A stretch of DNA of 64,000 bases, taken from Adineta vaga (lineage: Eukaryota; Animalia; Rotifera). The notes under the pieces were generated by a model, which was given only the letters and a program-made list of their open reading frames with translations, searched no databases and was not told the DNA's origin. The DNA lies in contig CP075496.1 in the NCBI GenBank assembly GCA_021613535.1, positions 7,316,001 through 7,380,000 on the forward strand, given 5' to 3'. The position numbers and the translations under genes were made by a program. This document shows positions 11,085-27,700 of this stretch, piece by piece; positions within the stretch are counted from its first letter, which is position 1; the number at the start of each line of letters is the position of its first letter.

Positions 11085-14000
11085 TTAAGCTGTTTGTATA
11101 TAATTTGCAGGAACATAACCACGTTGTGTGATATCATTTAGTTTCTCCGCATACCACCAATCTTCATTTCCACCATCATCGAGACGACGTAAAATTTTCA
11201 ATCGTTCACCAACATGTAAAGAAAGAACACCATCACTTGTACATTCAAAATCATACATAGCTACATATATCTAAATGATTTTCGAAGGAAATCTAAATAA
11301 AATCTTAATTAATATATATTTTCATACTCGTTCATCTTCATTCGATTCAGATATGGTGGAATCATCAAGATCAATTGAAGCATATTGATGAGATTCATTT
11401 ATTTGATTTAAATAAATTCGTTCACTATCACAATCACGCGAAGAATTTATTAAACATGATTGTGGTTCTGTATTTGCTCGAGTTAATAAGTGTTTTTGAT
11501 TTTCAGTACGTGATAGATCATAATTAAATGCCAGATTTGTATGAGCTACTGGTAGAGATGCTCGTGTTGGTATCATATCATGGCGGAGAGGCGTTGGTGG
11601 TGTATGAGACAGAAAACCTGATCGATCACCAGATGACAAAGGGATAAGAATAGAACGAGGTAATAAACCGCGAGTGACTAGAAGAAAAAGATATATTATT
11701 GAAAGAAGACGACGACGTTTTTCATACCTCCATTATCCACAAGCCAATGTATATCAATAGAATCTTTTGGATTTGTTTCATTTTGATTAATCACAGCGAC
11801 AAGATCGCCCTATTTTTAATAACAAAAGTTTTATTAAATAAGTTTTTTCTTAGTAACAATTTTCGATACGCCTTAAACAATGACTAATTAATCCTACTTA
11901 CACTTCGAACATTAATCTCCATTGATCGATTACTTGTTGTATTTGTATAATTTCGTATAACTGTAAATAGATCCTTTTCTGTATAATGATTTCTTAATAA
12001 ACGTCGAATTTCATCTGTTTGCATGGATTTATCCTAATTAATGGTACAATTATTCGAATGATCAAAACAAAAACGAAACATTCAACAATACAAACCTTAT
12101 CACTACTGTAAACATTACTCATCAAAGAAGCTATTCGAGCAGCTGATAGATGTTTTAATTTCTCAGAAAAATTCTTTGCTGTAATTGTCAATTGAAATAA
12201 TTGTTCAGCAGTTAAACTATTTTTCGAAGTAAATCTTTCTACAATTTGTAACCAACTTAATTGTCCGGAATTAGTCGATGATGTTGTCTATAAAAATAAA
12301 CAAGAGAATTCAATCAGAATATATATTTCATTATATTAATCGTTTCTTTACTAGATTAAGTGCATATTGAATATTTGTTCTCATATGTTGCATCAAACGA
12401 AGATGTCCAACAATAAATGCTTTTAAACAAATCGATAGAATTTCACAACTTTGTTCATATAGAACAGGTAATTCTTCGAGTAATTGACTATTTAGTGCTT
12501 CATATGTTTTTTTAGCTAGTTCGAGAACTTGTTTTGCCTAAATGAAGGAAAAAAAAATGAGATTTGAAGATGAGAAAAAAAACGATTTATTCAATTTACT
12601 TGTCGTGATTGTTGATCTTTAACTTTATCATACGCTGATTGAGCACTATCATAATCTAATAATTTATCATGTCGTTTCGATATTAAATTTGATGGTAAAA
12701 CAAATAGTTTAATTAATGTATTTACTGGATTTGCTACACATGATTCCATATGTGTACACTAGATAAGAAAAATAAGAGAAATAAACAGAATAAGAGAAAA
12801 AGGAATATTATTTACAAATTCAGTGAATGCATTTTCAAGTAATGAACGTTTTGATTGAGTAAATTGTTGAGCTAAATCCGGCATTTTATCCGATAATAGC
12901 TCTTGAAAATCTTCCGCAACGCTCACTTGAGTAACGAAAGTTTCCTAGAAGAAAATAACTGATTTTAATATCTATATCATTCGAATAAAGATCAAGAACA
13001 AAATGATTCACTTGCAGACAAAATCTATATTTTTTTTTAAATAAAGTTCAATGACAGTAGACAAAAAAACTACTATGATCTCATTTTTTTTCAAGTCAAA
13101 TTTCAGTTTATTTAATTCGCATCTTTCAAAAAGAAAAGACTCAAAAGTATAATAGATCAACTTTTTTTTGAAAAATCTTACCTTTAATGCTTCCATGCAA
13201 TTATAGGCATTGCGAACAAATAATCTTAAAAATTTATCAATTGATCGAAATCGTTGTTCTTCAAAATTGAATCGTTCATCAATTGTATGTGCTGATAAAC
13301 CAAATGCACTGGATAAACGCATACTAATACGTGCAGATTTCTTTCTCATGGTATGCATATTCAATTTATATAATTTATTTGTTAAAGCTTCATCTTTTTC
13401 TCGTCGTTGATATTTTGAAACTAAATGAGAAGAACGACATGTTCGTTGTGGATATTCTCGTCTGATTAAATTCGCTGCTGATAATCTCGGTAATGATGGC
13501 ATCGATGTCGCACGTCGAAATGTACTGATATGATATGGTTCCATATTATCTTCAGTGACATTGGTATTACGTGTACTCTTTACAAGTATATACCGTCTAC
13601 ATTTTGTCAAGGCCATTCGAAATGTATGTGAAGGGAGAACAATGTATATAAATGTGAGCGGATGAAATTGAAGATTCGTACGTTTTTTGCTCGAATGTAT
13701 GTATGTAAGTGATTATGCAAAAAATGTTTGTAGATCTCTTTTTCTCGTCGATGTTATTCTCGTATCTATATTCATTCTTTCGTTTTACCTTGATTCTTCT
13801 TCCTCTTTTTTTTCTTCTTGTTATTCACAAGGACATTGAAATGTCCAATGTCAATACAAAAATGAACACGTACCTATTTCTTTTCGTCGCTTATATTCAT
13901 TGATAAAATTAGCCATCGATATTAAATTCGATATCGCTTCTTTTAAATGTATATAATCCATATGATCACTATTTGTACTCTATGTAAAAAAACAAAAGAG

Positions 14001-17000
14001 ATGAATAGTCTTTGTTAAGTTATAATTACTTTGAACAATTCATTTAATATCAATGGATATCGAACAATACGTTGAATAGGACGTAAGAGAAGAGCAGGTA
14101 TATCGAAAACATTAGGTTTCAAGAGACGAAGTTTACAAAGACCATCTTGAAGATATTGTTGAAGTTTTTCATCATTCGCATGCTAAAAATAAACACATCA
14201 GAATAGTTTTCATTCGAAATTTACAAAATGAATATGCAATTTACCTTACGTAAATAAGCATGTACCCATTCATGATTTCGACAATATTCTGCATAAACAT
14301 GTTTTAATTGATCGATTAAGCCGTTAAAAACTTGACCAATACAACAATGTGCATCATCACCTTGTTGATTTTTTGTATATTCATACTCAAGGAGATTAAG
14401 AAGTTGACGTGTAATGTCATGAATATCACGGATATTTCCAAACAGAAGAGTTTTATTCACACTATCAGGCTAAAGATTGAAATAAGAGAAGAAGAAGAAG
14501 AAGAATTCTTTATAAAGCAAAGAAAAAGATGCTTTACACATAGAATGGAATTTGGATTAAGAAAAGTTTCAATTAATAAATCAAGATCACGAAAATAATC
14601 TCGTTCAGTGGATAATAATTCACTGATAGCATGTTGACGACGACTATGAATAATACTGAAAAGAATAATAGATTGAAAACATATCACAGAGAATTTTTGT
14701 TCAATTTACTTTGTATCAGTTTTATCAACTTGATCATCGATCAATAATTGATCTAAACAAAAGGAAGATTCTGTTAGTTCTGATGAAAGAGAATGATTTA
14801 GTCGATTACCATGTAAATTTTGTAATTCTAAATCAAAAAAATCTGTTCTTGTAGATGAAGTTTCAATATCACAGCTATCATGTGTTGATATCGTTTCCAC
14901 TTGATTAAAGGTTTTATCAAACGGATTATTTATTCCACGATAGAAACTCTATAATAAACATAAGTTTAATGTAAATGTACTATAAAAGAAAGATTATGTA
15001 AGTTTTATTCACTTGCCTGCTGTTGTTCAGTTTTGATTTGTATTGGAGGCCTTGGTGCTGGTCGTGTTGGACCTTTCCATTGTGGAATTGAAGAAGAGAA
15101 TGTTGGCACAAACTGTGGTGGCGGAGGAGGTGGTGGCAGCTGTGGTCGAAGAGAAAGACGAGGTTTGACAGGTGGTGGTTCATCAAATGATGAAAGGGAA
15201 GATGTTGATGATGGTGTATGACAAACATTATGAAATGTTTTAGCTGCTGAAAAAATATATTGATTACTTGTTGAAAAACTATGTAAAGGTACAGATGTAT
15301 AAAATGATTGAACATCGAGAATATTATTATTATTATTTGAATTAATATGATTTGATATTATAGGACAAGGATATTGTTGAGAATAATCAATTTGTGACGA
15401 AGCATAAATAGTGGATGCTGGTGGTGGAGATGCAAAATGAGCTAAAATAAAGGAAAATTCAATGAAAAACAGATACGAAAATGTGACACATACATGGATG
15501 CCAAATAGAGGAATAGAAAGGAAATGTTGCCTGATGATAATATCGACAACAATAACAACAATCGACAAAAGTGTTCATTTTGTCGAAAAACAAAGGATTT
15601 CTTTTTATTTCGATCTCGATTTGCGTCGATGTATGTCTTAGAACTGAACAATATTACTATGTATTTTACTGGTAGGTAAATGCGAAGAAGAAAAAAAAAT
15701 GAGAGAATAAGAGAAAAAAGAGGAACCGTCCAGGAAGAAGGGAAGGCAAGCACGTTCGAATAGACCCAATGTAATCAACGGTAGGGTCAATACAAAAGAG
15801 AAAAGAAAAAAAAACGAAAGAATCCTCTGTACACATATAACCAACATATCATTCTTCAGTTTTTTTTTGTTTCTGTTCATTTTTCCTTTCTTTTATCGCA
15901 CTACAATAATCATGTTCATATTAATAGTTACAATTATTGCTAGAGACAAATTCAGACTAGCAAATTTTTGGAATAAGATGACGCAAGTTGAAGGCGTTCT
16001 TTTTTTTGAAAAATTTTGTTTATACAGTTCGATTATGTAATAGACATATTAAGGCAAATAATACTGTACATTTATCACCTACTTGTATATACTTTAAGTT
16101 AGAGACTTTCATTACGTATGATAGGAATGGAAGAAAAGAAAAGAAAAGAAAAGAACTGATTTGAACGTCCCACTCACATTTATATTTCTTTGGAAGACAA
16201 TCTCGAAAACATTTTAAACATGATAACGATAATTTTGTTTGATGACAACAGAAATTTTTGGTCAAATGTTTTTTTATTCGACGAATATAAGTTGAAGAAG
16301 TAGATAATGAATGTTGATTAGTTGAAGTTGAATGAATATTCGAAGGATAATATGATGTCGAATGAAGACTTAATTGTGAACAGTTGATATCCAAATTCAT
16401 ATTTGATTGAGTATTTTATTTCGATATATTACTGTTTTATTAAATGATAAATCTTCTTTTTTTTCAAAACTGATTGTTATTCTAATTCAACATTAATTAC
16501 AACTTGTGTTCAGACAAAGTAACGTGGTCAATGTTGGAATACGCGAAAGGTGAACGTATGAATGAGAAGACAGTCAGTCAGACAGACAGAGACAGCAAGA
16601 AAGAAAGAAAGAAAGAAAGTAAAAGAAAGAGAAAGAGAACAAAAAAAATTTAAGTAAAAGACAATGTGTACAATTTCACTAAGCTACTAGCTCATCCAAC
16701 CATCACTATATATGTACATATATACATTGAAATGAATGACCGATGTTCAAATAGGAAAAGAAAGGAAAGAAGAGAGTAACAGAGACAAACTGATTAGCAA
16801 TATGTGATAGTTTGATCTATTGTGTTTTTGTTTGCTTTATAGTGAAGGTCAAACTGGACACAATTTGTCGAATGGCACGTTTGATCTAACGTATTGATTC
16901 GTATGTCTACTAAGATGAATACGAAAGAAATACTGTATTTGTTATCAATGAAACAATTATCGTAATTTTTTTTTTATTAGAACAATATTCATTTGTATAG

Positions 17001-18340
17001 ATTTGGAGGGCGATCGTCAATAGACGCATTTGTTGTATAACAAAAACGAAATGTAACTGCTTAAGGCTATCAAATAATCAATAAAAGAAAGAAAGAAAGA
17101 AAGAATGACGAAGTATCGTCTTCTTGAAAAACGAAAGAAGAATAGCTTGAGGTAATTATTCGATAAGAAAAGGAAATTCTTTAAATTTACCTTCTTGTTT
17201 TATCAGATCTTTTGTTCGTAATTTTTCAAATTCTTGAGCAACAAGTTCTTGAATGGAATCAAGTCCATTCTTTTTTGGTTTAATCTCTTGATGCGATTTG
17301 ATATTTGGTACAATTAATAGATCATTTTGTTCATCATCGATTTGTTTATCATCAATTGGTTCGATGAACATTCGTTTAACACGGCCAATTGAATTAAATG
17401 CATTTTTAACAATTAACCATTCACTTTCATTGATATCACCTTCGATAATAGCAAGAATTTCATCTTCAAAACAACCTAATTCATTTGTTCCACTCGGTTT
17501 TATATCACAAATGACTCGAACAAATTTTACAGGATTGATATCGAATGATAACAGATCGTGTTGACTAGATGATACTTGACTTTTTTCTAATCGGAAAAAG
17601 AAGGAATGCATCTATACATAAATTATTCAAATGAAAATCCTACTTGTTTGATTAGAACTACTTGATTTATCTTTTATTAATGTTACAAATGTACTTGGAA
17701 AGATACCAACAGGTCGAAAACTAGTTCCAGGTAAATCAAATTGTAATGAACCACGAAACCAACCATTTGATAAATGTTCATGAACAACTAGAAGATCACC
17801 TACAAAACAAAACAGCAAATTTTGAATATACAATGAGAATAGCTAATTACCTCGACGAAATCGTAAATCTTCATGATGACTTGATTGATAATCTGTATGT
17901 GCAATATACAATGATTGATTATCATCAAGTTTTACTGTTGGAAGTTGGTGAACAAATTTACAAGGTACGAGTCCAGTTTGATTATTTAAACGACCTCGTA
18001 ACCAATTACTATCCACTTGTTCTACAACCTGAAATAATAATATTAGAAAAGAATTATTTGATCATTAATAGAGTCTACAAATGATAAAGCGTTTTGATGA
18101 GCGTCATGCCTGATTAATCATAAATCAAACAATAATCAATAGAAATCAGAAGAAAAAGAATTCTCACGAGTATTTCATGTTTTTGTTTTTACTAATTAGA
18201 ATTCTTGATCAAAATGAGTTCATGCAATTAAATCCAGCTGTTAGATTATATGAAATTACCTCAATAACATCATCTATTTGCAATTCAAGATCACCAATAA
18301 CACCTGTTTGATATGGATATATGACTTTAGCATAGCTCAT
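11085..18340 (-). CDS. DNMBP: Dynamin-binding protein/Tuba-like RhoGEF: 3xSH3 - Pro-rich - DH - BAR - 2xSH3
   Basis: ATG 18340 (MSYAKVIYPYQTGVIGDLELQIDDVIE|VVEQVDSNWLRGRLNNQTGLVPCKFV). DH motifs AISELLSTERDYFRDL, LFGNIRDI, LLRPIQRIVRYPLILN, INEYKRRKEI. BAR region KLISKRHDKLLDYD. Final SH3 ends WWYAEK...GYVPANYIQTA* at 11085. Confidence 0.85.
16178..16400 (-). CDS. Putative alternative first coding exon of the DNMBP-like gene
   Basis: ATG-initiated 74 codons plus 1 nt ending at a strong gtgagt donor. Phase 1 matches the acceptor at 15442 of the Pro-rich exon. Confidence 0.6.
16597..16620. repeat. (GAAA)n microsatellite (a second copy lies at about 17084-17104)
   Basis: Direct reading: aagaaagaaagaaagaaagaaag. 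Confidence 0.8.
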
Positions 18341-18358
18341 GAAGTATTTATTAACAAT

Positions 18359-18375
18359 CTACAAAAAGAAAATCA
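18359..18375 (-). promoter_or_regulatory. Splice acceptor (ttttctttttgtag) 18 nt upstream of the DNMBP ATG; candidate trans-splice site
   Basis: Polypyrimidine tract plus AG in a 124-bp spacer after the TRAPPC2 stop, with no strong donor in the spacer. Confidence 0.55.
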
Positions 18376-18464
18376 TTACATAAAAATAATATTGCTAATC
18401 ACAGATTTCAAAATCGATTTTTATAATTGTTATGAAACTTTTTCTTTTGTTTCTTTTTTTCGTC

Positions 18465-18899
18465 CTATAAAATCCATTTACGAGCAATTGTTTGAATTTT
18501 TTTATCAAAAGCTCCCGATCGAATAGGTTTATCGGGTACATAAAATGGATTAAGTAAAAGTTTGACGTATGTTTCATAAACTTCTGTAAGAAAATTTTTT
18601 AAACCATCTTCACCCGTACGTGGTAAATGTTCGTAAAGAAATAGAAATCGAAGACCACCAGCTGTGACATATGCTGAAACAATCCATTCATTAAATTTAT
18701 CAACTTGTTTTAAATATGTTGTTGTATTACGCCACATGGCTTCATCGACAAGATCAAGCGCAGCATGTGCAATAAATTGATTTAAATGACGATTATCGGT
18801 TGATGATGTGGTTTGTGCAGTTGATCCACTAAGTTCTACTTCATACACAACTTGATCAGCATGACCAACAATGACAAAATAATAATTCGATGATGTCAT
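18465..18899 (-). CDS. TRAPPC2: Sedlin / trafficking protein particle complex subunit 2 (intronless CDS)
   Basis: YYFVIVGH..., RHLNQFIAHAALDLVDE, YLKQVDKFNEWIVSAYVTAG, LLLNPFY..IRSGAFDKKI are sedlin hallmarks. Confidence 0.95.
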   Translation of the reverse strand: MTSSNYYFVIVGHADQVVYEVELSGSTAQTTSSTDNRHLNQFIAHAALDLVDEAMWRNTTTYLKQVDKFNEWIVSAYVTAGGLRFLFLYEHLPRTGEDGLKNFLTEVYETYVKLLLNPFYVPDKPIRSGAFDKKIQTIARKWIL

Positions 18900-18978
18900 C
18901 TGAATCTACAGAGAGAACAAAAAAGAAATGGGAAAATACGTTATTTGAAGGAAGGAACTGACAAAAATCATCTTTATT
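18900..18978 (-). promoter_or_regulatory. AATAAA (18978-18973) followed by a pyrimidine tract and tandem acceptors (tgtag/attcag) abutting the TRAPPC2 ATG
   Basis: Minus strand reads AATAAAgatg...tttcttttttgttctctctgtagattcagATG. Confidence 0.55.
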
Positions 18979-19062
18979 CTAACTATGAAGAACGTGAGGG
19001 TTTTGTTTATAGGATCAAAAAAAAAGAAGAAAATACGAATGGATAATTCAAAAAAATGTCTT

Positions 19063-19364
19063 TTAACCAGCACGTTTTTTGAGTAATTGCCATCGCATAG
19101 CAAAGAATGGAACAGCTACAGCTGATGATATATAGAGAATCAAGGTTGTTGCCAAACCCCATTTGCTATTTGCTACAAGAAAATGTTTATAAATTATTTC
19201 TGTCATTTATAAATTAAAAGTTTCTTACTGTTGAATGGAACATTGGAACCAGGTAAAGCTTCTTGATCCCAGTTGTCTTTCATACGCATGCGGGAACTTA
19301 AACTAAATTGTCGACGACCGACGACTTTTGGTACAAGAGCAAGACTTGGACGAAGTGATGCCAT
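19063..19364 (-). CDS. COX7C: Cytochrome c oxidase subunit VIIc (81 aa, 2 exons: 19364-19229 and 19172-19063)
   Basis: Spliced translation MASLRPSLALVPKVVGRRQFSLSSRMRMKDNWDQEALPGSNVPFNTNSKWGLATTLILYISSAVAVPFFAMRWQLLKKRAG*. It has a transit peptide and the PGxNxPF..KW..PF..R.QLLK signature; 56-bp GT-AG intron. Not in the ORF track. Confidence 0.9.
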
Positions 19365-19496
19365 TATTTATATCTAAAAAAATGATTTTTGCACATATAT
19401 TAATTAACATATACTGGCAGCAATTATTATATATGAAAAACAAAACAAATAAAAAAGAAAAGTTTTTAAAACAACACATAAAAACAAAATCATTCT

Positions 19497-21256
19497 CTAT
19501 TGAGATGATGAAGTATAATCATAACTTGAAGAAGGATTATGCATTTGTAATGATGGCGGAACAGATGCAAATCTAGGATCATAAGTTGAATTTTGAGTAT
19601 AACCATATTGTTGAGTTGAATGGGATCCTGAATTCCATGTGGTAGTATTTGTACTATTATTTCCATAATGAACACTATTGCCATACATTTGTGATGAATG
19701 TTGAGATGGACCATGTATTTGTGAAATTGTACCCGTTGGTTGTTGAGATGGATTCATTGGCCATTGTTGCTGATGCTGAGACCATGGTACATTAGATGGA
19801 TATGAATTATAATAGTGAGAATCTAAAAGTAATTATGATTTATCAAGATATGTCGACCGTTATGTTATTCTAAATATTACCATAAGTATTCGATGACCAT
19901 TGTTGTTGTTGTTGCCCTTGAACATTCGCTGAATATGATGCTGGTCGTTGTGTCATTTGTGGTCGATACTGTCCTTGTTGATAATGACCATAACTGGATG
20001 TTGAGACATGATTACTGTTTGTGTGCATCATAGGATAAACTTGTGATACTAACTGTGATGACGAAGTGGATGGAGTATGTTGTAATACAGGTGGTGTTAC
20101 TTGTGTTTGGACTGGTTGTGAAGATGGTATTTTAGATTCATTTATTTGTATCGTTGATGATGGAGTAGCTGTAGATTGAGAAGATGATATCTGAGATGCT
20201 TCACTTTGCAATTCTGGTAATAAAGTTTGTATGGAAGATGAGAGCGATGGTGTTGATTCTGATGTTAATATCTGTTGTGATGGAATTTCATTTATAGATT
20301 CATGTTTAGCTTTCGATGTGACTAACGTATCTGGTTGAGATATTGTCGTTGTGGACGTCGTTGAAAGTTGTGCTTGTGTAGTTGCTGGAATAGTTTGTTG
20401 TTGTTGTTGTATGAGAAGTTGTTTTTCTTTCTGTAATTTTTCCATTGCTTCATGTTTTTGTATAATTTCATTTATTTTCTCTTCACTTAAATCCGTCGCT
20501 GATGCTTGTTTATAATCATCATAGAAGTTCTCATTTTCTTCTAAGAATTTACGTTTTTTCTCTACATGTTTTTGTTCGAGTTCAGTAAAGTCTTTTTCAA
20601 ATGTTTCACAATGTTCCTTAAGTGCATGAGCTTGACGACGTAATGTTGATATACGATCAGCATTGACATTCAATCGCAAATCTGGTATGCATACTTCATT
20701 AAATACTTCTTGTAATAAACGTTGATTACGTTGAAAGCGTGCAGCAGCTATATGTCGCATTGAAAAACATATTTCATCTTCATTATCATCACCTACTGAT
20801 GGCTCTATTGCAAACGATGGATTGTCCGAAGAAATATTGTGACTTGATATACCAGAACGAAGATATGAAGAATTATGTTCGTCATGAATGTGAAGATTTT
20901 TCTCTAGAATAAAGAAGTTTCGTTATCTGACACTCCTAATAAAATATGAAAACGGAAATACCATGAAAACTGCGTGACATCGGCCACATTTTATGCATAT
21001 AACGAGATGCATATGGTATTGAATTGGATTTCTCATTTGAATTCATATTAACAGCAACTGGTTTCATAGGTCCCATTGACATACTTGTTCGCATAGTAGA
21101 AGACATATTCATATTCGAACCTATTGATGAATTTGATGAATGATTAAAAGACATCGAACCATTTCCGATTCGTTTCAAAGATGATGATGGTAATCGTGAA
21201 TTATATGCTGGTTGTCCATGAGATGAAACAAGGAATGATGCAGAATTTCGTGCCAT
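19497..21256 (-). CDS. SMARCE1: SMARCE1/BAF57-like SWI/SNF subunit with truncated HMG box
   Basis: FSMRHIAAARFQRNQRLLQEVFNE..PDLR...LRRQ...EQKHVEKKRKFLE matches the BAF57 NHRLI/coiled-coil region. Exons 21256-20962, 20903-19881 and 19822-19497 join in frame. Confidence 0.8.
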
Positions 21257-23775
21257 AAAGAACTTCAAGAATTGCTAAAAGTTATTTGGACAAATACAAT
21301 TCAAATAACACACACACAGCTGTAGACTTCGTCTCGCTAGTATCAATGTGCAAAAAACATCGCTTTTAGCGTTTGTGAAAATCATCCACCACGTACATTC
21401 TTCAACCAATAGTTTCCCAGTACTTTCACAGTACTTTCATAGAGGTCACTTCAATACAGTACATGAGATCGATAAAGACTATATATTCGATCGATTTATT
21501 TTCCAGATATAGGATCATTTTTATACATTTTCTTTGATTCTTTGCTTATTTGTTTCATTTCATAGCATTTCATCTTTGTCTTGTATTAAGAGCACTTTGT
21601 AGAATGTATTTACGAGCAGTAAATCCATGGATCTATTTGCGTACGGAATAGAAAAAAAATTGCGTATTTATTCCATCAGTCTTTTTATTTTTTTTCCACC
21701 GAACTATTTAAAATACTTGATACTGATGGTGTTATAAAGAATAAAAAGAAAAAGAGAATGACGGTGTTAAAATAGACAGATGTTGCTTAGAAAAACTTAA
21801 ACGGATTTTAAACGAAAGAAATGGCATGTCAGCATATATTATATATTGACGAAGTATACAGCTTGTTTTATATGTTTCATACCTAATATTGAGTTGTTGT
21901 TTCCTGTAAGTTTTCGATTAAGTTAATTATTTAGTGTTGTACTAACATGAAGAGCATTACCAACATCACAGGCATTTCTATCACGAAAGATAGCATGTTG
22001 AAATATTAACTACTAACATTTATTTTTTTCCTTTTTATTTCGTCTGAATATAATGATGATCGGCATCTGACTGAACGATGTCATTTGTGCTGCCTATATT
22101 CACTCTCTTTCTCTCTTCTTTTTTTTGTCTGTTATGCTATTGTTGTCACACGACGAATATAGAGTACAAATTCCCTATCAAAATTCTCAGGAGACTCATA
22201 AGCACAGTAAGTCGTAAGCGTCTATTTTCATTTTCATTTCTGTTTCATTCTACTGACGTTGACAAACAGTTCAGAATAAGAAAGAAATATCGAAGATGAA
22301 AAATAATATGAAGATTAATCGCATGATTGACTATACTTATTCCGTTTAGTTATATATGTATGTTTGTCTTTTGTTGACTTGTTACTAACTATAGACATGT
22401 ATGTGAGGTTGAATATGTTTAAAAATGAATAGCAAGCAAGATAGGTTAAGAGCGAGAAAAATGTTGACAGTACGAAAAGCTGAATTGCATGATTATGATT
22501 GATTGATTGATATATCGTATTGTGTGTAGATTAGTAACTGACGGTCGAATTAAATATGACAAAAGCAAGAGATAGAAACCAAAGAAACTAGAAGCAAAAC
22601 ACAGACCTCGATCAAAATATATATCAAATCATTATTTATATAAATATATGTACACACATATATGACTTTATACTCCTACTAATCCATCCTTGCATTCAAC
22701 CATTCATTCATCTAAAATACCATAGAAGCGTATGAAAAGAAATGAGTCTAGATTGTTTTTTTTTCATGCATATACATTCTCGTGATAGTTTGCTTGTACG
22801 ATCAGTCGTCTAATTCTATCCAATAACGATGATATTGTGTTGTTGTTGTTGTTGTTATCATTCGCTAAACATAGTAGTGACTATTATTTTTAACGCATTG
22901 ATAAACGCTAGCTATAGCGCATATTTTTTATCATATAATTAGAACATTAATCGAGATATTATCGGTGTAAAAGTGTTTATACACATAGAAAGAATGTCGA
23001 ATTTCATGTCAACGAGTAGAACTTTGCCCTTTGATCAATTCTCGTTGTTTGATGTATTTATATAGAATACTATCAGTAAAAACACAAAAAAGAACTCGAA
23101 TGTCTCGCTTCCTTATTGATTTGTTTGTTCGATAACAAACAGATGTGACACTCTTGTTTTGATCACAAATTACTACTGTTTATGCTGTTTCTAGTACGAT
23201 TATTTTTTGTAATTATTCATTTGTAATTGTTTATATATATATATACATTTGTATGTTAATTCGAATAATTATTCATGATATACATTATGATTGATTCTGA
23301 ATTATATGCATAGATACATGCACTTGACTTCGCTTGTTGACGACAACGCGTAATGCCTTAATACGCGTTCAACAACCAAACTTATCTTTAAGCGTCGAGA
23401 ACTACTAGCACCACTCGATTGTAGTGAATGACGAGTTTATAGGATAACAGAAACGACCAAAAAGAGGAAAAAAACGAAGAAAAATGAAGAGAAAAACTCA
23501 CAAGAACAAGAAGAAATCAGTTCGCTCGCTTGCTTTGGTTGAGCATTCGGTGACGAGAATGACTTGAGCGATAGAATGAATGAGAAGAGAGAGAGAGAGA
23601 GTAGGCACATGTGGCTTGAAGGTTGTCGTGTTTGGCGAGACGACGAAGATGCTAGATATAGTAGTAACTACAGCAGTAGTAGCAGAGAAAAAAAATGAGA
23701 CTACCGGAAAATAATCATAATGGAGCACACATACACAAAGGTCTCTGCAGTTCTTCTTTATGACGTGCGCCTGAT

Positions 23776-24726: not shown

Positions 24727-27700
24727 ATGGCTAGTGTTGCTGCATGGCTTCCTTTTGCTCGAGCTGCAGCTATTGGCTGGGTTCCTTTATCAAAGAATCC
24801 TTTACCTCCACCACCATTTCGTGTATCAACACATGGTGCATCACCATCATCACCTTCAACATCTACGACATCAGCGACAGCAACAACTGTTAGTGAACGT
24901 CGTTGTGATGAAAAAATCATCATTAATGTTAGTGGTCGTCGTTTCGAATGTTGGCGATCAACATTAGAAAAATATCCTGATTCTTTATTAGGTTCAAATG
25001 AAAAAGAATTTTTTTATGATGAAGATACTCGAGAATATTTTTTTGATCGTGATCCTGATGTATTTCGTGTTATATTAAATTTCTATCGTACCGGTAAATT
25101 GCATTATCCTAAACATGAATGCATTGCTGCCTATGACGAAGAACTAGCATTTTTTGGTATATTACCTGATATTATTGGTGATTGTTGTTATGAAGATTAT
25201 CGAGATCGTAAACGTGAAAATACTGAACGACTTATTGATGATCGTTTGCATGAAGATGATGATAAAATTCAACCAAAACCTCAATCTTTGCGTGAAACAA
25301 TGTGGCGAGCATTTGAAAATCCTCAAGTATCAACAATGGCATCTGTATTTTATTATGTAACTGGATTTTTTATTGCTGTTAGTGTTATTGCAAATGTTTT
25401 GGATACAGTTGCTTGTGGACCTGACCCTGACACAGGTTATCCAAGATCATGTGGTGAACGTTTTTCTCGTCAATTTTTTTGTCTTGATACGGCTTGTGTC
25501 ATGATTTTTACTGTTGAATATTTTCTGCGTCTTTATGCAGCACCTGATCGATTAAAATTTGTTCGATCAGTTATGGTAAGAATGAATGAATGAATGAATG
25601 AAAACATCAATATAGTAACGAAATAGATCATATTGTTTTTGTTTTTTCTTTCTAGTCGGTTATTGATGTTGTTGCGATAATGCCATATTATATTGGTTTA
25701 TTCATGCATCAAAAAGGCGAAGTTAGTGGAGCATTTGTGACTCTACGTGTATTTCGTGTTTTTCGAATATTTAAATTTTCCCGTCATAGTCAAGGTTTAC
25801 GAGTATTAGGTTATACGTTGAAAAGTTGTGCCAGTGAACTTGGTTTTCTATTATTTTCATTAACAATGGCTATTATTATTTTTGCAACTGTTATGTATTA
25901 TGCCGAAAAAAGTGTCGTACATACGAAATTTACATCTATACCAGCTGCATTTTGGTATACAATTGTAACAATGACAACACTTGGGTAAGAATTTCATATT
26001 GTAATTCTTTGGATAGAATATTGAAATTAAAGTCATTACTTTGTCAGAAAAGAATTACGCGTTGATATATACATATGAAAGAGATTCTTCCTATTTGCTT
26101 CATCAAAGCCATACTCAAACGTATAGTTGAAGTGTTAATGGTACTTAATACATGTCAATAACGCCTTTAGGGACTATTTCATTCTATTTAAAATCTAATT
26201 ATTATTTTCTAGATATGGTGACATGGTACCAAAAACATGGTAAGTTACATAAAGAAAAAAGATTGTTTGTATTAATAAATCTAATTAATTATGAATCTAG
26301 GGCAGGAAAACTTGTTGGTGGTGTATGCAGCTTAAGTGGTGTACTCGTTATTGCTCTTCCTGTACCCGTTATTGTCTCAAATTTTAGTCGTATATATCAT
26401 CAAAGTCAACGAGCAGATAAAATGAAAGCTCAACGAAAAGCACGTCAGACACGAATACGTCTGGCACGTAATGCTACAAGTAATGCCTTTGTTGCTGCTA
26501 AGAAACGTCGTGAACAACAGGCAGACGATCCAAATTCATCAATGGATAGAAATCTTGTTAATCCATTTGAATTACAACATCATCATCTACTTCGTTGTTT
26601 GGAATTAACAACTGTAAGACAAAAAGAATTTTAAAGAAAGAGAACTCATATTTTAATGTTTATCTTTGTTCATTTGAAGGATCGTGAATTTATTGAAATG
26701 GGTACAGATGCATTAATGAATAGTGGTGGTCGAACAAGTCTTTCTGGCGGTACTGGAAATATGACTGGCCTCGGACGATTTACTTCACCAACAAGTCAGT
26801 TTTTTTTAAATCGTCGAAAATGGTTGTGTTGTGGAGCACGACCACGAAGAAAGAATTCATATAAATATAGTACTGTAAGTGAATACTATCATAAATATTT
26901 GTGAAAACTTGTCTTTATTTTAATCAGTCATCTACTGATTGAAAAAGACAGAGAATATGTGTCTAGTTTTATTCCTATTCTTATTTGTCTTATTTGACTT
27001 TTAAAAGCTGTCAATTAGAAATGCTAATATCAATATGAAGTAAATTAGCGTCATCTATTTCTATGAAATACCAATTACTAAATCCTTAGAGAACAAAATA
27101 GGAAAAGAAAGCGAATAATGTTACGACTTTTGTTTTCGAAAACCTCCTTCTATTTCTTATGAATTGCTTTTATTTCAGAATCGTACCAACAATAATAATA
27201 ATGTTAATGTCAATGATGATGAACTTGATGCTGAATTAGGTGATTTTCAATTGCCATTAGCATTGACTCCACGTGCTTCAGCAGCTTTACTACCACAAAT
27301 ACCTCTAGTGAATGTGATAAAACCACAAGAACACAGATCTTCTACATCCATCATAGGCTCGTCTTCATTACAACATGATGTTGTACTTCATTCCAATGTT
27401 GATGAACCCTTATTATCAGCAACAAATCGTTTTAATTTAAATCATCCATCAAGTAATGAATATCGAAATGTATTAAGTCGAAAAGCAAATAGTCTGTCGA
27501 CTGTTTATGAACATGGTTCAGTACATGAAACATCATTAAATGAATTACCATCCAATTCTAAACGTGCTCGTTTAAGATCACCATCAAGTATAACTGATTA
27601 TGCATATCAAAGAGCACACGATGTTCCTTCATGTGCAGAAAAAAACCCTGATGAATTAGAAACAGTAAGACGAAAAGATGCAAAATTAATTGTGTCTTAA
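24727..27700 (+). CDS. KCND: Voltage-gated K+ channel, Shal/Kv4 family
   Basis: [19 protein letters not shown]-terminus; T1 domain with the H-C-CC zinc motif; S4 [15 protein letters not shown]; pore TMTTLG|YGDMVP; S6 [11 protein letters not shown]; HHHLLRCLE tail. Confidence 0.97.

What the first reader, a model, noticed from the sequence alone, without database searches (positions are those of the whole stretch)
18340..21256. Candidate four-gene eukaryotic operon: SMARCE1-like > COX7C > TRAPPC2 > DNMBP
Seen: four unrelated genes on one strand with stop-to-ATG gaps of only 132, 163 and 124 bp. Each downstream ATG is preceded within 0-18 nt by a pyrimidine-rich AG acceptor (tttttttag at 19375, tgtag/attcag at 18907/18901, ttttgtag at 18360). 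The COX7C-TRAPPC2 spacer has AATAAA about 65 nt before the acceptor. Known: this poly(A)-signal / U-rich / acceptor layout is how nematode and tunicate operons are built, and spliced-leader trans-splicing is known in bdelloid rotifers. Inference: one promoter above 21256 drives a polycistronic pre-mRNA that is resolved by SL trans-splicing. The pattern only shows once the unlisted COX7C gene is recognised.
Basis: partly seen in the sequence, partly recalled or inferred. Interest (0 to 1): 0.9.

Follow-up and report, generated by a model that had tools for sequence, protein, structure and literature searches.

The report
Rotifer operon-like cluster with spliced-leader evidence
Four unrelated genes sit head-to-tail about 130-160 bases apart in a bdelloid rotifer genome. 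Public RNA data show that one gene's message ends at the base where the next gene receives its spliced leader. This is the layout of sea-squirt operons, and I found no report of operons in rotifers.

Summary
On the minus strand lie a SMARCE1-like gene, COX7C, TRAPPC2 and a DNMBP/Tuba-like gene, with stop-to-ATG gaps of 132, 163 and 124 nt. Each ATG is preceded by a pyrimidine-rich AG.

RNA contigs from four public studies confirm all five introns. One TRAPPC2 contig carries the 3' end of the bdelloid spliced leader, joined at AG 18907/18906. One COX7C contig carries a 23-A tail starting at 18905/18906. So the "spacer" is the COX7C 3'UTR, with no intercistronic DNA, as in Ciona operons. RNA is also continuous from the COX7C 3' end through TRAPPC2 into spliced exons of the fourth gene.

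The gene order recurs in many bdelloid lineages, but each junction is broken somewhere.

The single promoter for all four genes is not shown:
- the g1-COX7C spacer has no RNA cover;
- the COX7C 5' end was not seen;
- COX7C contigs are far deeper than g1 contigs;
- one lineage lacks g1 at this place.

My reading is a Ciona-type operon unit COX7C>TRAPPC2, probably extending to the fourth gene, with g1 membership open. The evidence rests on single contigs, not reads. The scan's first readers noted at least eight similar clusters elsewhere in this genome; none has been followed up.

The parts
19497..21256 (-). g1, a SMARCE1/BAF57-like gene with a coiled-coil region and no HMG box. Exons 21256-20962, 20903-19881 and 19822-19497 (stop included).
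   Evidence: PDB 6lth_Q, E 4.6e-20. Introns 20904-20961 and 19823-19880 are skipped in RNA contigs. No Pfam family.
21257..21364 (-). g1 5'UTR and likely transcription start region. RNA contigs reach 21348 (X18), and depth arithmetic for X1 puts it at about 21364. They run unspliced through an AG at 21276/21275.
   Evidence: tables 2 and 8. Bins from 21540 to 23500 have no RNA, apart from one small X1 contig in the 21934-22130 bin.
19365..19496 (-). g1-COX7C spacer (132 nt), with acceptor-like AG 19375/19374 and a conserved AT-rich block about 25-45 nt upstream of it.
   Evidence: No RNA contig covers 19373-19497 in any of the four runs, so this junction is untested.
19063..19364 (-). COX7C. 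Exons 19364-19229 and 19172-19063, 81 codons.
   Evidence: Pfam PF02935 on exon 2. Intron 19173-19228 is skipped in all four runs. The orthologues are called COX7C.
18905..19062 (-). COX7C 3'UTR, which is the whole COX7C-TRAPPC2 'spacer'. AATAAA lies at 18978-18973. Poly(A) is added at G 18906 or A 18905.
   Evidence: X5 contig 18905-19092 ends in 23 untemplated A on the minus strand, at depth 219 against 84.5 for TRAPPC2 (tables 7 and 8).
18906..18907 (-). SL trans-splice acceptor AG of TRAPPC2. The exon starts at 18905. A second AG at 18901/18900 abuts the ATG.
   Evidence: The X1 contig 18462-18907 carries 9 extra letters that are the reverse complement of the SL 3' end (CTTACCAAG, followed by AG). 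This 9-mer is absent from the whole window. It is present in the SL genes and in the published SL (PMC3795323).
18465..18899 (-). TRAPPC2 (sedlin), a single exon of 144 aa.
   Evidence: Sedlin_N, 3.9e-43. It is 78-93% identical to TRAPPC2 of named and presumed bdelloids and 66% to that of Didymodactylos. It is single-copy in this genome.
18341..18464 (-). TRAPPC2-g4 spacer (124 nt). It holds acceptor AG 18360/18359, a conserved branch-point and pyrimidine block, and a conserved TGTGATT.GCAAT block with an AATAAA-variant position about 45 nt upstream.
   Evidence: Near-invariant in 8 lineages. RNA contigs cross it unspliced: X5 18326-18811, X16 up to 18413, and the long X18 contig.
11085..18340 (-). 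g4, a DNMBP/Tuba-like gene with SH3 repeats, RhoGEF and a C-terminal SH3. The first exons are 18340-18258, 18026-17849 and 17797-17644.
   Evidence: Pfam SH3 and RhoGEF. Introns 18027-18257 and 17798-17848 are skipped. The Rotaria orthologue has RhoGEF, BAR and SH3, and the two are collinear down to about 12366.

Best explanation
The genome is a bdelloid rotifer's, most likely Adineta vaga. That rests on 100.8 Mb in 6 contigs, the bdelloid SL genes and bdelloid nearest relatives.

COX7C and TRAPPC2, and probably the DNMBP-like gene after them, are transcribed through one another. They are separated by spliced-leader trans-splicing in the Ciona manner, with no intercistronic DNA.

Shown:
- The SL is joined to TRAPPC2 at AG 18907/18906.
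- Polyadenylated COX7C RNA ends at that same AG.
- RNA covers both downstream junctions unspliced.

Inferred:
- A single pre-mRNA carries these cistrons.
- Either the trans-splicing cut itself makes the COX7C 3' end, which is then polyadenylated, or cleavage and trans-splicing compete on each molecule. Both were proposed for Ciona.
- The DNMBP-like gene is processed in the same way at AG 18360/18359.

Whether the SMARCE1-like gene upstream feeds the same transcript is open. COX7C may have a promoter of its own in or near the 132-nt spacer.
For::
- The five joints prove that the contigs are RNA.
- The region upstream of g1 is silent, which argues against DNA contamination.
- The SL 3' end (9 letters plus the shared AG) sits at 18907 in X1.
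- X16 has a contig break at 18907.
- A 23-A tail follows 18905 in X5.
- The 4618-nt X18 contig runs from 19092 through TRAPPC2 into spliced g4 exons.
- X5 contig 18326-18811 crosses the third spacer.

Other calls:
- The 9-mer occurs nowhere in the window.
- There are 58 SL gene matches, each followed by a GT donor.
- Placed independently in a 163-nt spacer, a poly(A) site and an acceptor would coincide within about 1 nt with a chance of roughly 0.02 (my arithmetic).
- In Ciona operons the poly(A) tail is added to the G of the acceptor AG, and most lack AAUAAA within 40 nt. Here the nearest AATAAA is 67 nt away.
- COX7C>TRAPPC2 adjacency holds in Rotaria socialis and Didymodactylos and in six distinct lineages represented by unnamed, presumed bdelloid contigs. 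TRAPPC2>g4 holds in Rotaria socialis and nine such lineages.
- The acceptors are conserved far above the intron baseline.
Against: - Each key signal rests on one assembled contig in one run. Contigs cannot prove single molecules, as the tool itself warns.
- No SL or poly(A) end was seen for COX7C's 5' end, TRAPPC2's 3' end or g4's 5' end.
- Contig depths differ greatly: g1 is 0-51, COX7C 175-1460, TRAPPC2 24-90 and g4 4-90. Depth is a poor measure, but this does not look like simple co-expression.
- Each junction is broken in some lineage while the downstream gene keeps its acceptor. L022 has COX7C first. L033/L034 have TRAPPC2 without COX7C upstream. Didymodactylos lacks g4. The C1 ohnologue has only g1 and COX7C. 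So each gene can run from its own promoter.
- The conserved AT-rich blocks in the spacers could be promoter elements.
Confidence: 0.6

Rival explanations
1. This is tight packing only. Each gene has its own promoter, lying inside or just after its upstream neighbour. Each short outron is removed by SL trans-splicing, which more than half of bdelloid mRNAs undergo anyway. Read-through RNA is ordinary 3' run-on, and the poly(A)/acceptor coincidence is a by-product of compaction.
For: - COX7C (L022) and TRAPPC2 (L033/L034) keep the same AG-ATG architecture with no same-strand gene upstream.
- Contig depth steps up sharply from g1 to COX7C.
- The spacers hold conserved AT-rich, TATA-like blocks.
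- At least 50% of bdelloid transcripts carry the SL (PMC1925144), so an acceptor alone says little.
Against: - Poly(A) added at the acceptor AG leaves no DNA between the cistrons. Making either RNA end requires transcription across the boundary, which is the argument made for Ciona.
- A TRAPPC2 promoter would have to sit within the 460 nt of COX7C.
- RNA is continuous over two junctions in three runs.
Confidence: 0.3
2. One reading: one promoter above 21256 drives a four-cistron pre-mRNA (g1, COX7C, TRAPPC2, g4), and SL trans-splicing resolves it at all three acceptors.
For: - The g1 5'UTR starts by about 21350, and the 3.4-kb region up to a divergent Kv4 channel gene is the only long non-coding stretch.
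- g1>COX7C adjacency with a spacer of 132-160 nt is kept in the ohnologue on contig 1, in Rotaria, and in L024, L029 and L036.
- The AG|ATATAA acceptor is conserved.
Against: - No RNA contig covers 19373-19497 in any of the four runs.
- The COX7C 5' end was not seen.
- COX7C contigs are 10-30 times deeper than g1 contigs, and X5 has COX7C at 623 with no g1 contig at all.
- L022 has COX7C>TRAPPC2>g4 without g1.
Confidence: 0.25

Closest known systems
Ciona intestinalis operons without intercistronic DNA (Satou et al. 2006, PMC1488885)
   Same: - Same-strand genes of unrelated function.
- The downstream cistron is SL trans-spliced.
- The upstream mRNA's poly(A) tail is added at the G of the acceptor AG.
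- There is no canonical AAUAAA within 40 nt of that site.
   Different: This is a different phylum with an unrelated SL. Here there is one junction seen in single contigs, against 19 junctions mapped by cDNA clones. No dicistronic clone is in hand.
Caenorhabditis elegans SL1-type operons, as summarised in PMC1488885. The primary paper (Williams et al. 1999) is recalled from memory and was not read here.
   Same: [quoted passage not shown]
   Different: From memory, the nematode cases have AAUAAA a few bases before the trans-splice site and a very long pyrimidine tract. Here AATAAA is 67 nt away.
C. elegans SL2-type operons
   Same: A co-oriented cluster, with the downstream genes trans-spliced.
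   Different: Those have a spacer of about 100 nt between the poly(A) site and the acceptor, and a dedicated SL2. The COX7C/TRAPPC2 boundary has no such spacer. No operon-specific SL was tested.
Chaetognath operons (Paraspadella gotoi, PMC12460157)
   Same: Both belong to Gnathifera. There, 18% of genes lie in SL-associated clusters spaced under 250 bp, with no operon-specific leader.
   Different: The chaetognath operons were defined genome-wide by spacing plus SL reads. The architecture of their boundaries was not compared here.

Membership tests
SL-resolved metazoan operon | Two or more same-strand genes with very short spacing | tested here: met
   Gaps of 132, 163 and 124 nt.
SL-resolved metazoan operon | The organism has SL RNA genes and uses the SL | tested here: met
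   58 matches to the SL exon followed by a GT donor. The sequence equals the published rotifer SL.
SL-resolved metazoan operon | Downstream cistrons are SL trans-spliced | tested here: inconclusive
   Met for TRAPPC2 (SL 3' end at 18907). The 5' ends of COX7C and g4 were not recovered in the contigs.
SL-resolved metazoan operon | A polycistronic precursor RNA exists | tested here: inconclusive
   RNA contigs run from the COX7C 3' end through TRAPPC2 into spliced g4 (X18), and across TRAPPC2-g4 (X5, X16). A contig across two genes does not prove one molecule.
SL-resolved metazoan operon | No promoter between the cistrons | not testable with these tools
   This needs cap-selective 5'-end or nascent-RNA data.
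Ciona-type / SL1-type operon without intercistronic DNA | The upstream mRNA's poly(A) site abuts the downstream trans-splice acceptor | tested here: met
   For COX7C/TRAPPC2, the A-tail starts after 18906/18905 and the SL is joined at AG 18907/18906. Each rests on one contig.
Ciona-type / SL1-type operon without intercistronic DNA | No canonical AAUAAA within 40 nt upstream of the poly(A) site (a trait of most Ciona operons) | tested here: met
   The nearest AATAAA is at 18978-18973, 67 nt upstream.
C. elegans SL2-type operon | An intercistronic region of about 100 nt between the poly(A) site and the acceptor | tested here: not met
   The distance is zero at COX7C/TRAPPC2.
SMARCE1 / BAF57 | HMG box plus a C-terminal coiled-coil region | tested here: not met
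   The coiled-coil region matches human SMARCE1 residues 165-391. No HMG box was found in any exon, and no RNA lies upstream of about 21364. 'SMARCE1-like' is a fair label; full membership is not.
DNMBP / Tuba | N-terminal SH3 repeats, DH (RhoGEF), BAR and C-terminal SH3 | tested here: inconclusive
   SH3, RhoGEF and a C-terminal SH3 were found. BAR was seen only in the Rotaria orthologue's precomputed hits.

The most novel reading that the evidence does not exclude
Bdelloid rotifers use Ciona-type operons widely. Trans-splicing of the downstream gene and polyadenylation of the upstream gene share one phosphodiester bond, perhaps because the trans-splicing cut itself makes the 3' end that is then polyadenylated. 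Chaetognaths, also Gnathifera, have SL-associated operons, so operonic transcription may go back to an early gnathiferan or have arisen repeatedly in the same form.
Probability: 0.3. Interest if true: 0.8.

Novelty: new member of a known kind. Interest (0 to 1): 0.62.

Why it matters
SL trans-splicing in bdelloids has been known since 2005. [quoted passage not shown] My searches found no later report.

A boundary where the poly(A) tail and the SL meet at one AG would place rotifers beside Ciona and the rare nematode SL1-type operons. That makes the open question of how such boundaries are resolved testable in a third lineage. It also bears on annotation: the short COX7C gene was reportedly unlisted. 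And it bears on how a compact, rearranging, asexual genome keeps genes expressed. If the pattern is general, as other first-stage notes on this genome suggest, it would change how bdelloid gene regulation is modelled.

Tried and rejected
- Looking up the window's own TRAPPC2 in public assemblies found nothing on record. No further RNA contigs of this species could be fetched.
- All fetched relatives turned out to be DNA contigs. The COX7C intron is present and they hold no SL, so they give synteny only.
- The 30-letter unlike tail of the g1 contig at 19498 has no match in the haploid assembly. I take it to be the other allele, which also has a 21-nt insertion at 19550, and not a splice. This leaves the g1 3' end unmapped.
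- A local cis-spliced origin of the 9 SL letters is rejected, because the 9-mer is absent from the window.
- DNA contamination as the source of read-through is rejected. Introns are absent from the contigs, and 21540-23500 is almost silent.
- Nematode-style spacing is rejected for COX7C/TRAPPC2.
- Ranking genes by contig depth is used only as a weak hint, as the tool advises.
All protein searches were done exon by exon, by reference, so the joined COX7C, g1 and g4 proteins were never searched.
Full report
**What is there.** The window is G000 contig 4, 7316001-7380000. The assembly has 100.8 Mb in 6 contigs, and GC is about 31%. Together with the bdelloid spliced-leader genes and bdelloid nearest relatives, this points to Adineta vaga. 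That is an inference.

Four genes lie on the minus strand:
- g1: ATG 21256, stop 19499-19497.
- COX7C: 19364-19063.
- TRAPPC2: 18899-18465.
- g4: ATG 18340.

The stop-to-ATG gaps are 132, 163 and 124 nt, as reported. AATAAA is at 18978-18973.

**Gene identities.** All protein searches were done exon by exon, by reference.
- COX7C exon 2 passes Pfam's cutoff.
- TRAPPC2 is a clear sedlin.
- g1 matches the coiled-coil half of human SMARCE1, E 4.6e-20. It has no HMG box.
- g4 has SH3 repeats, a RhoGEF domain and a C-terminal SH3. It ends at 11085. Its Rotaria orthologue also has BAR, so it is DNMBP/Tuba-like.

No same-strand gene follows closely after g4. Upstream of g1 lie about 3.4 kb of non-coding DNA, then a divergent Shal-type potassium channel gene starting at 24727 on the plus strand.

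**RNA evidence.** The runs were found and were available only as assembled contigs. I laid four runs from four studies on 17600-23500 (5901 letters).

All five predicted introns are skipped with GT..AG ends, and the region from 21540 to 23500 is almost silent. So the material is RNA, not DNA. No other joint was reported in any spacer, which argues against cis-spliced 5'UTR exons.

Three observations bear on the operon idea.

*First.* In X1, the TRAPPC2 contig (18462-18907) continues with nine letters whose reverse complement is CTTACCAAG.
- Followed by the genomic AG, this is the 3' end of the bdelloid SL. The genomic SL exon is followed by GT in 58 matches, and the published 23-nt SL is in PMC3795323.
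- The 9-mer is absent from the whole window.
- TRAPPC2 is therefore SL trans-spliced at tgtAG, with its exon starting at 18905. X16 has a contig break at the same base.

*Second.* In X5, the COX7C 3'UTR contig (19092-18905) ends in 23 untemplated A.
- The genome reads ATTCAGATG there, so this is not internal priming.
- Because 18905 is itself an A, the tail may start right after G 18906.
- The COX7C message thus ends at the acceptor AG of TRAPPC2, and the 163-nt "spacer" is simply the COX7C 3'UTR.

*Third.* RNA crosses the junctions unspliced.
- A 4618-nt X18 contig runs from 19092 through both spacers and TRAPPC2 into g4 exons, with the g4 introns removed.
- X5 (18326-18811) and X16 (up to 18413) also cross the TRAPPC2-g4 spacer.
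- The tool rightly warns that a contig across two genes does not prove one molecule. It does show that RNA spanning the unspliced acceptors exists.

[quoted passage not shown] There is no intercistronic DNA, and most operons lack AAUAAA within 40 nt (PMC1488885).

The COX7C/TRAPPC2 boundary has all three traits. That paper argues that such a boundary makes independent transcription units unlikely, because forming either RNA end needs transcription across it. It offers two mechanisms: trans-splicing itself makes the upstream 3' end, or cleavage and trans-splicing compete on each molecule. I cannot tell these apart here. The nematode SL2-type layout, with a spacer of about 100 nt, is not met.

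**What is not shown.**
- The g1-COX7C spacer (19373-19497) is not covered in any run.
- The g1 contig ends at 19498 in 33 unlike letters that match nothing in the haploid assembly. It is probably the other allele, which also carries a 21-nt insertion at 19550.
- The COX7C contigs stop 17-33 nt short of the ATG, so its 5' end is unknown.
- No SL or A-tail was seen at the g4 acceptor.
- The g1 5'UTR reaches 21348-21364, running through an AG at 21276/21275 unspliced. This fits a conventional promoter there.
- Contig depths are g1 0-51, COX7C 175-1460, TRAPPC2 24-90 and g4 4-90. The tool says depth is a poor measure, so I treat the step-up at COX7C only as a hint that COX7C has its own promoter.

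**Comparative evidence.** The ohnologous region on contig 1 keeps g1>COX7C, with a 140-nt spacer and an AG before the ATG. It has lost TRAPPC2 and g4, which are single-copy.

| Gene order | Where found |
|---|---|
| g1>COX7C>TRAPPC2>g4 (all four) | Rotaria socialis (L018-L021), L024, L029, L036/L037 |
| COX7C>TRAPPC2>g4 (contig ends upstream) | L026, L027, L030, L035 |
| COX7C>TRAPPC2>g4, no g1 | L022 (COX7C sits next to the same divergent channel gene) |
| TRAPPC2>g4, no COX7C within 1.6 kb upstream | L033; L034 (421 nt upstream held) |
| COX7C>TRAPPC2, no g4 | Didymodactylos |

The order is therefore widely kept, but each junction has been broken somewhere. In those cases the downstream gene keeps its AG-ATG architecture, so the acceptor alone is not diagnostic of an operon. 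All of these contigs are DNA.

The spacers hold blocks that are nearly invariant across 4-8 lineages: the three acceptors, a branch-point and pyrimidine block before g4, and AATAAA-like positions. The COX7C intron is not conserved. These blocks fit RNA-processing signals, but promoter elements are not excluded.

**Verdict.**
- COX7C>TRAPPC2 is a Ciona-type boundary with direct, though thin, RNA support.
- Extension to g4 is likely.
- Inclusion of g1 under a single promoter is unproven and has some evidence against it.
- I found no report of operons in rotifers in the searchable literature, and PMC7986045 says none had been reported.
- First-stage notes list at least eight similar clusters elsewhere in this genome, and one pair in this window. 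None has been followed up, so the pattern may be general.

Noticed in passing
window 24727-26634 (+): A Shal-type (Kv4) potassium channel gene lies divergent to the cluster. The same neighbour sits next to COX7C in the unnamed bdelloid contig L022, so synteny extends beyond the cluster.
   Followed up: partly
G000 contigs 1, 2, 4, 5 and 6; for example L009 1340-1620: SL RNA genes (58 matches) mostly lie in head-to-head pairs about 156 bp apart, with large arrays on contig 5 near 9.88-9.93 and 10.91-10.93 Mb. Variant leaders exist, such as A for C at exon position 9 or 12.
   Followed up: no
window 19498-19900: The expressed g1 contigs in X1 and X16 differ from the assembly by a 21-nt insertion behind 19550, a 3-nt deletion at 19900 and a different 3'UTR. 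This is probably the other haplotype, which the haploid assembly does not hold.
   Followed up: partly
window 21934-22128: A small low-depth RNA contig in X1 lies in the otherwise silent region upstream of g1. It continues for 185 letters unlike the window. It could be a repeat or an unannotated RNA.
   Followed up: no
window 18385-18405; L018, L024, L025, L029, L035, L036: A block TGTGATT(C/A)GCAAT, followed by an AATAAA-variant position, is nearly invariant in seven of the eight aligned lineages, about 45 nt before the g4 acceptor. It could be a poly(A) signal region or a bZIP-like binding site.
   Followed up: partly
L005 (G000 contig 1, 5799000-5808999): The ohnologous copy keeps g1 and COX7C. 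COX7C exon 2 is 100% identical in protein there, which explains why the RNA contigs break at 19063. It has no TRAPPC2 or g4 downstream.
   Followed up: yes
window 18899-18907 versus the orthologous loci: In every other lineage the TRAPPC2 acceptor abuts the ATG (YTTCAG|ATG), so the 5'UTR would be the SL alone. This genome has an extra tgtAG 6 nt upstream, and that is the one seen in RNA.
   Followed up: partly
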